From Bugula neritina (lineage: Eukaryota > Animalia > Bryozoa): a stretch of 64,000 bases of DNA. The position numbers and the translations under genes are program-made. The notes below the pieces were generated by a model. It worked only from the letters and a program-made list of their open reading frames with translations, had not been told where the DNA came from and made no database searches. Within the stretch, counting starts at the first letter, position 1. Every line of letters begins with the position of its first letter. The DNA lies in NCBI GenBank assembly GCA_964035545.1, contig OZ037768.1, forward strand, positions 1,954,741 through 2,018,740. Reading direction: 5' to 3'. Shown piece by piece: positions 16,625 to 20,682 of the stretch.

Positions 16625-19600
16625 CTAGACGGAAGCTACCTGCGACTCCTGGTGCCCTTCACCTTCAGAGTCGTCTTCTTCCAGCAGGTCGTTGTCTAGA
16701 TCCAGTGGATCGTTTTCAAAGCAGTCTTCTGTCTGAACGCTGGCCGCGTCCACGCCTGAAATATGCACCAGACTGGTGAAAACTCTATACACAATACTTC
16801 ATCTTCTAGTGAAGAGAAAATTAAGAAGTTGATCACGTCTATAGTGAAAGTCTAGTGACTGAAAATTATATGAAGTTGGCTTTTATGTGAAATATTCTCA
16901 ATTAAAATGACATTGCTGGATGTGCTTTCAGACAAAAATTATAATGAAATAGTAAATTGGTGTTTCATACATATTGTGGCATTTAATTTTGTAATTTGGT
17001 TCATTTTACTTACCTTGATTAACAACCAGACCATTTTCATCCATCTGAAAAATTGAATATACCAAATATATTCAGATGCATAAACATAGACCAGATGTAC
17101 TTGTGCCCCCCCCCCCTTACCCCTACTCTGACTATTTATTCTATTTACATGTCAGCACACTTGCGTCATCATAAGAGCAAAGCCGTTTTATCTCCATTAG
17201 AGGAAGATACTACCAAAATAACAGAAGTTAAAAATATTTTTCCATAACTCAATTACTTTGAACTATCAGGATATGCAAACAGTGAATAGCTCTAGAAGTA
17301 AAGCAATAAATATTACCCTATTTCAGTTTTAACTAACATTTTAGTTGCAATTAACATGCCCGAAAACAAACTGACAGCATGAAAAATATAATATTAAATC
17401 TTATAGTAGACCAAAGTTCCCATTATAATAAAAAACGCAACTTACTTCTGTAGCTTCTTTACAAATTGTAAGATTATGAAATTTCTCCACATGTTGAATA
17501 AGTTGCCACGGAGTGACATATTGCTTCAAACAAATTGCACATGCTATGACTTCTGGTATGCTTTCTTCTGAAATATGCATATGAATAGACATCATCCAAC
17601 CCATTCCGCCACTTTATACAACTAGCTCAAATCTTAATTTGATTCGAGTAAATTATTGTTTTAATAAATTTTATTGTTAAATGGTATATAATATTATACT
17701 GAATAATTTACATTCAAAGGATGTTCAAGACCTGTTTGTATTAAAAACTTGACTAGAGAATCATAGAGTTCATAGGTTACATCAAGAGAAGGTAAACAGA
17801 TGGCATGTACGATAATAACATCCACAATCACCGGCTTTCCATGGACCGATCTCAGATCGATCTTAGCGAGATCGATCCATGGAAAGACGCCAAAGATCGA
17901 TCTGAGAAGTAGAAAAAGACTACAATGTTGTCTGCTAATAAAAATGATAACTTATTTATAATTACTAAGCAAAGTATTAAATAATTATGATAGCCACCTT
18001 TTCAGATGCCAAAACTTTGACTTTCAGTACGATGATTAAGAAAACTCAATTATATGCAGTAGAAGGTAAAAGAAAATGGGAGAATTTAAATTGAATTTAA
18101 ATGACTATTAAAACTTAGTTTCATTAGCTATTTTCTTTGTAATTTTAAGCCTAACAGTCCTGTAAGTTTATTAATAATCTGCAAGACAGCCATTAATTTT
18201 ATATAAGCTGTCAAGCTAAAAAAAAGTAAAACTAATTATTTTTAATTGGCCAAATTACTATACACTGAAAGCTTTGCTGCGTATAGTTTATAGCTGGGAT
18301 TAAATTTTAGACTACCACCATCTTGTTTTCAACAGTAGTAGCTTTAATCACTCAAATAGGTGAACAAATTATACTTTTGAAGTATCCTTCACTTAAGAGG
18401 AGGCAACTTCGCTAGATTGATCTGACACTCTCATGGAAAAACGATCGATCTGAGCACATTTTTTAGATCGATCTCGCTGAGATCGATACATGGAAAGCCC
18501 GTGAATGTCTGCTGCGTTGTTTGAATTATATACATGGTTGCAGATTGGCACTACTCTGGGACATTAGTTAGCATACAAGATTTCACACAAAGCAACTTAC
18601 CAAGTTCTAAAAAAATTCAGACTATTTTCTTGTTGAAAAATTACACAAAATCGTGCAAATAATAAGTCAATCTAAAACCGAACACTCCTTTATAAGCACC
18701 TGAAAGAGACTAGGGGGACACCTTACCCTGGCATCGGCAATTCACTTGAGATCTACATGGAGTTCTTTTATGGTCTATTAGAGTCTCTAGACTGTTGAAT
18801 ACTCCATGACAGCTTCCACATACAAGAATGTCTTTTATTGTCTCTGAGAAGTAAAGAGCACAGCTATTGGAGGACTGCGTTTAAAGAGCATAGCTATTGG
18901 AGGACTGTGTGTAAAGAGCACAGCTATTGGAGGACTGTGTGTAAAGAGCATAGCTATTGGAGGACGGTGTGTAAAGAGCACAGCTATTGGAGGACAAAAA
19001 ACTAGAATTAGATTAAAATATTTTTCAACAACTTTGACATGAAATATCACCCAGCTAGGAATATCCACATATACACGATCTATCCTAAATCCTCAGCTAA
19101 CAATCATGAAGTTAACAAAAAACTGAAAAACGCTAAATAATATCTAGTGTTATTGCTAAAATTTAGAGCAAGTTTTTGAAAGAAGAGACTTTTGAGGTGG
19201 CAGTTTTAATAATCAGTTACTAGTGACTTTAGAGAGACTTTTCTATAGAATTCTAAAGAGCTTACCTGTGTCAGACTTAGACTTCTTAGCCCTACAAGTA
19301 TAAAGGTGAAAATACATGACCCCCTGACCAGCCAAACAATTAGTCTCAAAACCGGCTCTTGATTTACAAGACAATAAAATCTGAGTTGTAAAGAGATATT
19401 CAGGCAGTATTCCAGGTAATGCCTCATAGAAATTAAGAGAGAGCAACAAATATTATACTAGCCAGCAGAGTACAGTAAGTCACTCACTGTGGAGGAGATG
19501 AAGCTCGAGCACCACTAAACGGCCGCTTTTTGAACAGCGGTTCAGGGTTTATAGGTACAATTTTCTGAACAGGTGCAACAACTTGGTCGGAAGACATAAG

Positions 19601-20682
19601 GGGTCTGATAGGAGTGGCATTAGAAGAACCCTTGAATTCGGCCAGTCTCACTTCTATCGTATGATAAAACAAACAGAAAAAGGAACTAGTAAACGTTTTG
19701 CAGGTTATTTATAAAGACAGAGAATTCATCTACTATAATTAAACTAAAACTTTGCCACTTCTAATCAGTCAAACAAGATGATACAAAACAATGCATGGAA
19801 GTACAATATGAGTAAATAAACTTGTAAACATAAAGTTGTAGACTGCCTTAGAATATCAAATCCTTTAAATATTAATATATAATCTGTAAATGCATTTTAA
19901 TATTTCAATTAATGCAAAATTATTGTGCATTTAGTTTATGTTTCTGACTGGGTTTTTGCCAACAAGAGACAAAATTCTGTGAGATGTCAAAAAAGCTTTG
20001 ACTTTAAAATAAGGCATTTCTTACTGAAAATCATTATAACTGCGAAAAGTAAACATAATTTTAATGTTAATTTATTTACTGTAATTATATTATTACAATG
20101 TCAAAGGATAACTTAGAGAAACTGTAATATGAATTGTTCTTACCAAGAGCATAGCCGTGATACTTTCTCCCATTAACAGCCTCTACGGCGTTATGCGCAC
20201 TGTCAACATCTACGAATTGAATAAATGCGAAGCAGCAACCGCCTTTTGGAGATTTGCATGTAAGATTAGAAATGGCAGTGATGGTGCCATAATGTTGAAA
20301 GAGATTGTAGAGATCCTTGCGGTACACTTTATAACGGTCAAGGTTGCCAACAAATATTCGACTGGCTTTAGTTGCCGGATCTTTTGTTTCGGAGGAAAGC
20401 TTATCTAGCAGCTTACTCTCAGCTGTTGACGGCGCGTGTTGCACAAAGTGAGGGTTTCTCTTTCTTGAACCCCTTCTGCCATTCCCTATTTGTATGTAAA
20501 CAAAGTGAATAGATGCAGATGAAATGACAAAAGACACGTTGAACATGCGATTTCTTTTATAAATTAGATCAACACAGACAGCTCACAATGAGATAGCAGT
20601 GATAGCAATTTAAAAACTATTTATTACCTTGGCCAGAGTTGTTTCTTGGTGGAACATTACTGTATTGATTGAATTGCATCAT
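16625..20682 (-). CDS. Protein with RRM (hnRNP C/RALY/NCOA5-type), CCHC and C2H2 BCL11-like zinc fingers and an acidic tail (329 aa, 8 coding exons)
   Basis: Exons 20682-20628, 20485-20144, 19653-19488, 19291-19266, 18843-18727, 17567-17446, 17044-17014, 16755-16625; all GT-AG; 990 nt open. RRM TKDPATKASRIFVGNL..FAFIQF; fingers DILVCGSCHGVFNSLETLIDHKRTPC and CAICLKQYVTPWQLIQHVEKFHNLTI; AATAAA immediately after the TAG. Confidence 0.85.
17829..18503 (+). mobile_element. Non-autonomous DNA transposon (MITE family A, copy 1) in intron 5 of the RRM-ZnF gene
   Basis: TIRs CACCGGCTTTCCATG / CATGGAAAGCCCGTG; AAT on both flanks (3-bp TSD); subterminal GATCGATC arrays; second copy at 33771-34546. Confidence 0.92.
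18851..18995. repeat. 30-bp minisatellite, about 4.8 copies, abutting the exon-5 acceptor of the RRM-ZnF gene
   Basis: Unit GTAAAGAGCA(C/T)AGCTATTGGAGGACTGTGT at 18851, 18881, 18911, 18941, 18971. Confidence 0.95.

What the first reader, a model, noticed from the sequence alone, without database searches (positions are those of the whole stretch)
16625..20682. RNA-binding RRM fused to the two N-terminal zinc fingers of the BCL11 transcription-factor family
Seen: eight exons splice in phase into one 329-aa ORF. It contains a basic N-terminus (GRRGSRKR), an RRM, a Pro/Ser linker with NLS-like KKRP and AKKSK, a C-x2-C-x12-H-x4-C finger (DILVCGSC..DHKRTPC), a C-x2-C-x12-H-x4-H finger (CAIC..PWQLIQHVEKFHNLTICKE) and an acidic tail. 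Known (from memory): TKDP..SRIFVGNL resembles hnRNP C/RALY and invertebrate NCOA5 RRMs. The second finger matches BCL11A ZnF1 (CTTC..AWFLLQHAQNTHGLRIYLE) at W, L, QH, H-x-L-x-I and E. The first resembles BCL11 ZnF0 and the ZFP64-type N-terminal CCHC finger; BCL11 ZnF0 is a multimerisation module rather than a DNA-binding one. Inference: an exon-shuffled RNA-binding protein that oligomerises through the ZnF0-like finger, or hetero-oligomerises with BCL11-type repressors and links them to RNA. The RRM-to-finger junction introns are mostly phase 1, compatible with shuffling. I know no named gene with this architecture, and the ORF track misses the CCHC exon entirely.
Basis: partly seen in the sequence, partly recalled or inferred. 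Interest (0 to 1): 0.85.

Follow-up and report, generated by a model that had tools for sequence, protein, structure and literature searches.

The report
Bryozoan hnRNP C-like gene with fingers
The gene is real and transcribed, but it is not a new fusion: it is the bryozoan copy of an hnRNP C/RALY-like RNA-binding protein that carries the same pair of zinc fingers in insects, spiders, crustaceans, molluscs, brachiopods and priapulids.

Summary
Observation confirmed. Eight GT-AG exons on the minus strand (20682 to 16625) join into one 329-codon frame. Spliced contigs of an RNA-Seq run from a related species show the joints E1-E2, E3-E4, E4-E5 and E5-E6 at exactly the predicted bases, so the RRM linker exon and both finger exons lie in one mRNA.

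Interpretation only partly right. The architecture (RRM, basic linker, C-x2-C-x12-H-x4-C finger, C2H2 finger, acidic tail) is not a local exon shuffle. It has a full-length orthologue in the bryozoan Watersipora. A profile search returned over 100 proteins with both fingers, from arthropods, Priapulus, Lingula and Pinctada. Databases name them 'hnRNP C', 'Raly-like' or 'C3H8.09c-like'. The orthogroup's RRM profile hits human hnRNP C and RALY at E about 1e-38.

The first finger is BCL11A-ZF0-like: that is its best solved match (E 1.7e-4), and hhalign gives 97% against this genome's own BCL11-type fingers. It fails the Pfam cut-off (20.4 against 27 bits) and has 12-residue, not 14-residue, spacing. 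The second finger shows no specific BCL11 ZF1 signal.

The fingers sit where vertebrate hnRNP C has its tetramerising zipper. Self-association is a reasonable guess, but it is untested; the one dimer prediction gave no verdict. I found no paper describing this finger module.

The parts
20628..20682 (-). Exon 1: start codon at 20682 and 18 codons (MMQFNQYSNVPPRNNSGQ); ends in phase 1
   Evidence: An RNA contig carries 60 nt of it joined to E2. It is 94% identical in the related assembly L042.
20144..20485 (-). Exon 2: RG-rich N-terminus and most of the RRM (RNP2 RIFVGN, RNP1 CFAFIQF), with an 8-residue loop insertion specific to the bryozoan-type sequences
   Evidence: Pfam RRM_1 47.9 bits. Aligned to the orthogroup. 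A 341-nt RNA contig matches without gaps.
19488..19653 (-). Exon 3: last RRM strand (EVRLAEF) and a Pro/Ser-rich, net-basic linker with KKRP
   Evidence: Joined to E4 and E5 in one RNA contig. Collinear with Watersipora residues 144-163.
19266..19291 (-). Exon 4: 26-nt micro-exon, (Q)AKKSKSDT, NLS-like
   Evidence: Joints 19290/1-19488 and 18843-19266 in RNA. 100% conserved in L042.
18727..18843 (-). Exon 5: CCHC finger (C-x2-C-x12-H-x4-C) followed by the invariant C-x5-C-x-C tail
   Evidence: Aligns to the orthogroup consensus PDILICGNC..HK..C....C.C. hhalign gives 97% to BCL11-type fingers. BCL11A ZF0 is the top PDB hit. 38 of 38 residues are identical in L042.
17446..17567 (-). Exon 6: C2H2 finger (C-x2-C-x12-H-x4-H) with an invariant Trp on the helix
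   Evidence: The RNA joint 17567-18727 links it to E5.
17014..17044 (-). Exon 7: MDENGLVVNQ
   Evidence: Canonical splice sites. Conserved in L042. No spliced RNA contig was shown.
16625..16755 (-). Exon 8: acidic tail (..LDLDNDLLEEDDSEGEG..) and TAG stop
   Evidence: Matches the Watersipora C-terminus DLENDLIDEE. 86% identical in L042. An AATAAA follows the stop.

Best explanation
This is the bryozoan member of a protostome-wide orthogroup of hnRNP C/RALY-like proteins. Their standard build is one N-terminal hnRNP C-type RRM, a basic linker, a BCL11A-ZF0-like CCHC finger with an extra C-x-C, a C2H2 finger with an invariant Trp, and an acidic tail. That much is shown.

The rest is inferred. 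It is a nuclear pre-mRNA-binding protein. The RRM, helped by the basic linker, holds RNA; U-rich tracts are likely by analogy with hnRNP C. The two fingers are protein-contact modules, not nucleic-acid readers: their helix contact positions are acidic or hydrophobic, not basic. They lie between the basic region and the acidic tail, exactly where vertebrate hnRNP C has its tetramerising leucine zipper. The most likely job of the finger pair is therefore self-association or recruitment of a partner, which would multiply the RNA-binding surfaces.
For: Gene and mRNA. Purifying selection against a related species: pN/pS 0.32, with no amino-acid change in the CCHC exon.

Orthology: a full-length Watersipora subatra orthologue has the same order of parts. 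109 of about 115 further profile hits carry both fingers. They include Lingula 'hnRNP C isoform X3', Pinctada, Priapulus 'C3H8.09c-like', and crustacean, spider and insect 'Raly-like' or 'hnRNP C' proteins. The window's E5 and E6 align without gaps to the module consensus. The Lingula protein searched back against this genome hits this gene best in the RRM, the CCHC finger and the C2H2 finger.

RRM type: the orthogroup profile hits human hnRNP C (133.9 bits) and RALY (133.6 bits); the next single RRMs score about 60-78 bits.

Fingers: hhalign gives 97.1% probability, E 6e-11, against this genome's BCL11-type CCHC fingers. The top PDB hits are BCL11A ZF0 chains 9b4p and 9bv0. The AF2 model gives two beta-beta-alpha fingers at pLDDT 83.

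Contact positions -1, 2, 3 and 6, read from the sequence, are S,E,T,D in finger 1 and T,W,Q,Q in finger 2; the orthogroup consensus is acidic or hydrophobic there.

Literature: human hnRNP C is laid out RRM-BASIC-ZIPPER-ACIDIC, and the zipper makes the tetramer (PMC9943658). BCL11A ZF0 and ZF1 mediate multimerisation (PMC12006351; bioRxiv 10.1101/2024.12.10.627839).
Against: The window's RRM alone is divergent. Against the PDB it scores 32 bits to hnRNP C, and PABP, ZCRB1 and SRSF1 rank higher. The hnRNP C assignment therefore rests on the orthogroup, not on this sequence alone. The alignment used for the profile search (A4) also included two hnRNP C/NCOA5-like RRMs, which biases which RRM proteins were recovered; it does not bias whether they carry fingers.

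No test here shows oligomerisation; the one dimer prediction gave no verdict. The fingers lack the run of five hydrophobic helix residues that PMC12006351 links to BCL11A multimerisation. RNA binding by the fingers is not excluded. Three of the seven splice joints were not seen in RNA.
Confidence: 0.72

Rival explanations
1. One reading: a lineage-specific exon-shuffled fusion of an RRM with the two N-terminal fingers of a BCL11-type factor. It would hetero-oligomerise with BCL11 repressors and tie them to RNA.
For: The CCHC exon is flanked by phase-1 introns. The CCHC finger is ZF0-like. The genome does hold a BCL11-like gene and three more genes with true PF25491 fingers, each followed by a C2H2 exon. 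BCL11A and BCL11B hetero-multimerise through ZF0 (PMC12006351).
Against: The architecture is shared by Ecdysozoa and Lophotrochozoa, so any fusion predates their split. It is not a feature of this genome. Pfam PF25491 is below cut-off in the window (20.4 bits), in Watersipora (13.1 bits) and in 30 of 39 module sequences. Spacing is x12, against x14 in BCL11 (PMC12006351). Other x12 CCHC fingers of this genome score higher against the module profile than the BCL11-type ones do: 33.8 and 31.5 bits against 23-26 bits. The second finger scores 11.8 bits on the BCL11-like ZF1 exon, no better than unrelated fingers.
Confidence: 0.05
2. The finger pair is a second nucleic-acid-binding unit, for RNA or single-stranded DNA. 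It would give bipartite recognition together with the RRM and would not be a protein-contact module.
For: An invariant solvent-exposed Trp on the helix of finger 2 could stack on bases. Several RRM proteins pair the RRM with RNA-binding fingers; the atlas neighbours include matrin-3-like and ZNF638-like architectures.
Against: Canonical contact positions are acidic or hydrophobic in both fingers across the orthogroup (read from the alignments). The nearest specific relatives of finger 1, BCL11A ZF0 and FOG/U-shaped CCHC, are protein binders (bioRxiv 10.1101/2024.12.10.627839).
Confidence: 0.18
3. Two neighbouring genes, an RRM gene and a small finger gene, were wrongly merged.
For: The E2-E3 joint was not displayed. 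A public annotation of the related assembly predicts only a 190-aa RRM-containing product (P0001).
Against: One RNA contig runs E3-E4-E5 and another joins E5-E6. E3 encodes the last RRM strand, so E2-E3 must be joined for a whole RRM. The orthologues are single proteins. P0001 is mis-framed because of a 1-nt difference in E2 of that assembly.
Confidence: 0.03

Closest known systems
Protostome 'hnRNP C / RNA-binding protein Raly-like / uncharacterized RNA-binding protein C3H8.09c-like' proteins (for example Lingula anatina hnRNP C isoform X3, P0177; Watersipora subatra uncharacterized protein, P0003)
   Same: Same order of parts: N-terminal RRM, basic linker, CCHC finger with a C-x-C tail, C2H2 finger with W-x-L-x2-H, acidic tail. 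All invariant residues of the module are present in the window's exons.
   Different: The bryozoan sequences are the divergent end of the family: 33-44% identity in the RRM and about 35% in the module. They have an 8-residue insertion in an RRM loop, a longer RG-rich N-terminus, and the shortest spacer between the fingers (13 residues against 18-54).
Human hnRNP C1/C2 and RALY
   Same: Same RRM type; the orthogroup profile gives E about 1e-38. Same overall layout: RRM, then a basic region, then a central module, then an acidic tail (PMC9943658).
   Different: The vertebrate proteins have a leucine zipper that forms the tetramer, and no cysteines there (from memory). This protein has two zinc fingers at that position and no zipper.
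BCL11A/BCL11B ZF0 (CCHC) and ZF1
   Same: Finger 1 shares the L-x-C-G-x-C...F...H-K-R-x2-C signature. It is an isolated, atypical finger followed by a second atypical finger. In BCL11 these two fingers multimerise (PMC12006351).
   Different: Twelve residues, not 14, lie between Cys and His. Pfam PF25491 is below cut-off. There is no run of five hydrophobic helix residues, no DNA-binding finger arrays and no NuRD-binding N-terminus. Finger 2 has no specific ZF1 signal in this genome.
Drosophila CG42458
   Same: Treated in the literature as the fly orthologue of hnRNP C, at 30% identity (PMC5570092). Dipteran proteins of the orthogroup with both fingers were recovered here.
   Different: The D. 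melanogaster sequence itself was not among the listed hits. Whether it has the fingers was not checked here. Its molecular function is unstudied beyond RNAi screens and marker use (PMC5570092, PMC6890465, PMC10632452).
FOG/U-shaped and other x12 CCHC fingers (Pfam CCHC_ZFPM2)
   Same: Same C-x2-C-x12-H-x4-C spacing. Second-best PDB class for finger 1 (1fu9, E 0.022).
   Different: Weaker match than BCL11A ZF0. Those proteins have many fingers and no RRM.

Membership tests
Protostome hnRNP C/RALY-like RRM-CCHC-C2H2 orthogroup | Single N-terminal RRM with (D)P-x4-5-SR(I/V)(F/Y)VGN and (Y/F)AF(V/I)Q | tested here: met
   E2 aligns over its whole RRM with 12 invariant columns shared. It scores 104 bits against the A6 profile, but A6 includes E2 itself.
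Protostome hnRNP C/RALY-like RRM-CCHC-C2H2 orthogroup | CCHC finger D-I-L-x-C-G-x-C..F..H-K..C followed by C-x-C | tested here: met
   E5 holds all nine invariant columns of A7. The A5 profile scores 55 bits at the E5 locus, the best in the genome; A5 includes E5 as one of 39 rows.
Protostome hnRNP C/RALY-like RRM-CCHC-C2H2 orthogroup | C2H2 finger C-x2-C-x7-W-x-L-x2-H-x4-H | tested here: met
   E6 holds all six invariant columns of A8.
Protostome hnRNP C/RALY-like RRM-CCHC-C2H2 orthogroup | Reciprocal best match with a named member | tested here: met
   The Lingula protein P0177 searched against this genome hits the window's RRM, CCHC and C2H2 exons best (E 4e-5, 3e-3, 0.24).
hnRNP C/RALY family (vertebrate sense) | hnRNP C-type RRM | tested here: inconclusive
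   The orthogroup profile hits hnRNP C and RALY at about 1e-38. The window's exon alone gives only 32 bits to hnRNP C, and other RRMs rank higher.
hnRNP C/RALY family (vertebrate sense) | Basic region plus leucine zipper (tetramerisation) | tested here: not met
   E3-E4 is Pro/Ser-rich and net basic, but it is followed by zinc fingers, not a heptad zipper (read from the sequence). The layout of the human protein is from PMC9943658.
hnRNP C/RALY family (vertebrate sense) | Acidic C-terminal region | tested here: met
   E8 is rich in D and E.
BCL11 family / Pfam PF25491 CCHC_BCL-11A | Score at or above the curated cut-off (27 bits) | tested here: not met
   20.4 bits, covering profile positions 1-11 only. 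Watersipora scores 13.1 bits. 9 of 39 module sequences match at E 0.1 or better, none above cut-off. The genome's true BCL11-like exon scores 54.8 bits.
BCL11 family / Pfam PF25491 CCHC_BCL-11A | 14 residues between the second Cys and the His | tested here: not met
   12 residues here. hhalign needs a 2-residue gap. The x14 spacing is stated in PMC12006351.
BCL11 family / Pfam PF25491 CCHC_BCL-11A | Remote homology of the CCHC finger to ZF0 | tested here: met
   hhalign gives 97.1% probability, E 6e-11. BCL11A ZF0 chains are the top PDB hits, E 1.7e-4.
BCL11 family / Pfam PF25491 CCHC_BCL-11A | C-terminal DNA-binding C2H2 arrays (ZF2-3, ZF4-6) | tested here: not met
   The protein ends 60 residues after finger 2 with an acidic tail.
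BCL11 family / Pfam PF25491 CCHC_BCL-11A | Second finger specifically ZF1-like | tested here: not met
   The A8 profile scores 11.8 bits on this genome's BCL11-like ZF1 exon, equal to unrelated fingers.

The most novel reading that the evidence does not exclude
The ZF0-like CCHC finger, its invariant C-x-C and the Trp-bearing C2H2 finger form the self-association device of invertebrate hnRNP C proteins. It would be the functional counterpart of the vertebrate leucine zipper and would share ancestry with the ZF0-ZF1 multimerisation module of BCL11. One of the most abundant nuclear RNA packagers would then have swapped its oligomerisation domain during animal evolution, and the module is so far missed by domain databases.
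Probability: 0.22. Interest if true: 0.55.

Novelty: new member of a known kind. Interest (0 to 1): 0.33.

Why it matters
For this locus the result is mainly a correction. It looked like a one-off fusion but is the ordinary, rather divergent, bryozoan copy of a widespread gene.

The family-level picture has some value.
- Invertebrate 'hnRNP C' orthologues carry a strongly conserved two-finger module that Pfam profiles do not reach, so automatic annotation shows only an RRM.
- I found no paper that describes the module.
- It sits where the vertebrate protein has its tetramerising zipper, and its first finger resembles the BCL11A finger now known to drive multimerisation.

This gives a concrete, cheap hypothesis for how non-vertebrate hnRNP C proteins assemble. 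It is also relevant to fly work that uses CG42458 as 'hnRNP C'.

Tried and rejected
- **Joined model.** The joined 329-aa model was never sent to any search or fold tool. The join was made only inside local scripts to count length, phase and stops. One search also wrote the joined coding sequence to a scratch file, which was not used again. The Watersipora orthologue P0003 stood in for the whole protein.
- **Complex prediction**, two copies of the Watersipora finger module: score 0.23 against a mark of 0.32. No verdict, and not evidence either way.
- **Foldseek** of the module model against the PDB: only generic two-finger proteins, E 0.018 at best.
- **PDB sequence searches with single exons**: nothing specific. 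BCL11A ZF0 appeared only with family profiles.
- **The search for homologous proteins** with P0003 alone and with its finger region: only P0003 itself. An alignment was needed.
- **MAFFT** repeatedly split the short exon peptides when they were aligned against full-length proteins. Those alignments were discarded.
- **ESM Atlas** gave the lead 'C3H8.09c-like, Arthropoda' but no sequences.
- **P0002 and P0005** (bryozoan-type RRM fragments) lie on contigs under 1 kb, so their fingers could not be checked. P0003 is not on record in the contig index.
- **RRM near the paralogous finger pair on contig C5:** none within about 10 kb downstream and 25 kb upstream.
- **Pfam on three long ORFs beside that paralogue:** nothing.
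- **Earlier scan notes:** nothing relevant.
- **Literature searches** for an hnRNP C zinc-finger description: none found. This covers only the open-access library.
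Full report
**1. What is in the sequence**

On the minus strand between 20682 and 16625 there are eight exons:
- E1 20682-20628
- E2 20485-20144
- E3 19653-19488
- E4 19291-19266
- E5 18843-18727
- E6 17567-17446
- E7 17044-17014
- E8 16755-16625

Every intron begins GT and ends AG. The exons join into 990 nt, which is 329 codons and one terminal stop. Intron phases are 1,1,2,1,1,0,1. The join was made only inside a local script, to check frame and length.

Translated exon by exon, the product has these parts in order:
- an RG-rich N-terminus
- an RRM (Pfam RRM_1, 47.9 bits) that ends in E3
- a Pro/Ser-rich, net-basic linker with KKRP and AKKSK
- a C-x2-C-x12-H-x4-C finger followed by C-x5-C-x-C (E5)
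- a C-x2-C-x12-H-x4-H finger (E6)
- an acidic tail (E8)

**2. Is it transcribed as one unit?**

One public run holds the locus as DNA (X2). Another, whose library is recorded as RNA-Seq of a 'symbiont metagenome' (X1), holds only about 5% of the sampled words. Laid on the region, X1 gives contigs about 93-96% identical to the window that lie on exons only.

X1 carries four joints with CT..AC ends on the + strand, at exactly the predicted bases:
- 20484/5 to 20627/8 (E1-E2)
- 19290/1 to 19488 (E3-E4)
- 18843 to 19266 (E4-E5)
- 17567 to 18727 (E5-E6)

None of these joints is in the DNA run. One 310-nt contig runs E3-E4-E5. So the exon that completes the RRM and carries the linker is on the same RNA as both finger exons.

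The E2-E3 joint was not among the rows shown. The two contigs stop exactly at the two exon edges and neither enters the intron. For E6-E7 and E7-E8 only a low-depth unspliced contig was shown. Those joints rest on canonical sites and on conservation, as follows.

A related public assembly (GCA_010799875.2, locus L042) is 86-90% identical in DNA. It has all eight exons in order: E5 is 38/38 identical in protein, E4 8/8 and E6 37/40. Over E1 and E3-E8, pN/pS is 0.32. That assembly has one extra base in E2, which explains why its public gene model (P0001, 190 aa) is mis-framed and lacks the fingers. The RNA contig over E2 shows no gap.

**3. What it is**

An exhaustive HMMER search with the RRM exon found few close relatives: P0001, two short fragments, and one full-length protein, P0003 (318 aa). 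P0003 is an 'uncharacterized protein' of the cheilostome bryozoan Watersipora subatra. It has the same order of parts. The window's E2, E3, E5, E6 and E8 match it collinearly, at 47%, 45%, 62%, 50% and 46% identity. The window is therefore very probably from a bryozoan.

A protein-atlas look-up of P0003 pointed to arthropod clusters named 'RNA-binding protein C3H8.09c-like'. I then ran a profile search with an alignment of P0003, the window's RRM exon and four other RRM fragments. It returned 2363 hits, of which the best 120 were listed. Of the roughly 115 new proteins, 109 have both a C-x2-C-x12-H-x4-C finger and a downstream C-x2-C-x12-H-x4-H finger.

Those proteins come from insects, crustaceans, spiders, scorpions, ticks, Priapulus, the brachiopod Lingula and the oyster Pinctada. 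Their sources name them 'heterogeneous nuclear ribonucleoprotein C', 'RNA-binding protein Raly(-like)' or 'uncharacterized RNA-binding protein C3H8.09c-like'.

Aligned, the module reads YSNPDILICGNCRExFxxLxxLxxHKRxYCKLRFTCKC, then a variable spacer, then LxCxxCKxxFxxxWDLMxHxQxAHxxNIYxL. The window's E5 and E6 fit it without internal gaps and keep every invariant residue.

The orthogroup's RRM profile hits human hnRNP C (133.9 bits) and RALY (133.6 bits), far above the next single RRMs at about 60-78 bits. The Lingula protein searched back against this genome finds this gene as the best match in all three domains. This locus is thus the bryozoan member of an old protostome hnRNP C/RALY-like orthogroup.

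It is a divergent member. It has 33-44% identity in the RRM, an 8-residue loop insertion shared only with the other bryozoan-type sequences, and the shortest inter-finger spacer. On its own, the window's RRM does not rank hnRNP C first.

**4. The BCL11 question**

In favour:
- The family's CCHC profile aligns to this genome's four true BCL11-type CCHC fingers with 97.1% hhalign probability (E 6e-11). Those four pass Pfam PF25491 at 35-57 bits.
- Its best matches among all solved structures are the two BCL11A ZF0 entries (E 1.7e-4). The FOG/U-shaped CCHC finger comes next (E 0.022).

Against:
- PF25491 scores 20.4 bits on E5, under the 27-bit cut-off, and only its first 11 positions align.
- It scores 13.1 bits in Watersipora and is sub-threshold throughout the orthogroup.
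- Spacing is 12 residues here and 14 in BCL11 (PMC12006351).
- Other x12 CCHC fingers of this genome score higher against the family profile than the BCL11-type ones do.
- For finger 2, the family profile gives 11.8 bits on the BCL11-like gene's ZF1 exon, no better than unrelated fingers. The PDB search gives only generic C2H2 hits.

The architecture spans Ecdysozoa and Lophotrochozoa. The phase-1 introns therefore say nothing about a recent shuffle.

**5. How it probably works**

Shown: it is an expressed, selectively constrained protein with an hnRNP C-type RRM and two classical beta-beta-alpha fingers. The AF2 model of the Watersipora module has mean pLDDT 83, with the C-x-C stretch at about 55.

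Inferred from established knowledge: human hnRNP C is laid out RRM-BASIC-ZIPPER-ACIDIC. The zipper, helped by the acidic region, makes the tetramer that wraps long RNA (PMC9943658). Here the order is RRM, basic linker, two fingers, acidic tail, so the fingers take the zipper's place.

The canonical base-contact positions are S,E,T,D in finger 1 and T,W,Q,Q in finger 2, and they are acidic or hydrophobic in the family consensus. That is the pattern described for protein-binding fingers (bioRxiv 10.1101/2024.12.10.627839). BCL11A ZF0 and ZF1 are multimerisation modules (PMC12006351).

My best reading is a nuclear RNA-packaging or splicing-modulating protein whose finger pair mediates self-association or partner binding. 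This last step is untested. The single dimer prediction gave no verdict. The fingers lack the five-residue hydrophobic run of BCL11A ZF0 and ZF1. RNA binding by the fingers, for example through the invariant Trp, remains a live rival.

**6. Unexplained**

Two more cysteines, five and seven residues after the fourth zinc ligand, are invariant in all 35 aligned sequences from bryozoans to insects. They have no evident partners within the module.

**7. Novelty**

The locus is a new, divergent member of a known and already annotated kind.

In the open-access library I found no paper describing zinc fingers in invertebrate hnRNP C orthologues. The fly gene treated as hnRNP C, CG42458, is known only from RNAi screens and as a neuronal marker (PMC5570092, PMC6890465, PMC10632452). 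Whether it has the module was not checked here.

The family-level observation is modestly interesting. The original claim of a unique fusion is not upheld.

Noticed in passing
G000:C5:13295058-13295922 (loci L023, L034, L036), minus strand: A second copy of the finger pair elsewhere in the genome. A CCHC-like exon (..CDILICGLCLQVFSAIECLKQH..C..C.C) lies about 650 bp upstream of a C2H2 exon (..CSFCPETRNSAWKLLVHVQLSHRVILCKQ). They score 37.6 and 32 bits against the module profile. No hnRNP C-type RRM lies within about 25 kb upstream or 10 kb downstream. It is either an RRM-less paralogue or a partial duplicate. Its expression is unknown.
   Followed up: partly
L023:7731-9999 (G000:C5:13298230-13300498), minus strand: Three long uninterrupted ORFs (136, 444 and 188 aa) lie directly upstream of that paralogue. 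None has a Pfam match. In an intron-rich genome this looks like an inserted mobile or viral-type element. It was not identified.
   Followed up: partly
window 17824-18508 (intron 5): A MITE-like insert of about 685 bp with terminal inverted repeats of about 39 nt (GATCGATC-rich). Read depth in the DNA run is about 1000 times the flanks, so it is a very abundant repeat. It is absent from the orthologous intron of the related assembly L042.
   Followed up: partly
window 18851-18995 (intron 4, just upstream of the CCHC exon): A 30-bp tandem repeat, 4.8 copies, 93% matches. One copy ends at the acceptor of exon 5.
   Followed up: no
L042:10001-11733 (GCA_010799875.2, VXIV02000055.1): The public gene model for the orthologue in the related assembly (P0001, 190 aa) is mis-framed and lacks both fingers. 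A single extra base in exon 2 of that assembly, relative to the window and to the RNA contig, is the likely cause.
   Followed up: yes
G000:C4:17391299-17392030 (L007, L024) and G000:C3:14514227-14551261 (L008-L010): The genome has a BCL11-like gene: a CCHC exon at 54.8 bits on PF25491, followed by a C2H2 exon ..CYTCPKQFSAAVSMLHHAQYQH... It also has a cluster of three further genes with true BCL11-type CCHC fingers within 37 kb. At least one of them is followed by a C2H2 exon ending ..HCLQLCE.
   Followed up: partly
P0008 (648 aa): An NCOA5-like protein has a duplicated hnRNP C-like RRM plus a weak HGTP_anticodon match at its C-terminus. It is the next-closest RRM to the window's, at 48% identity.
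   Followed up: no
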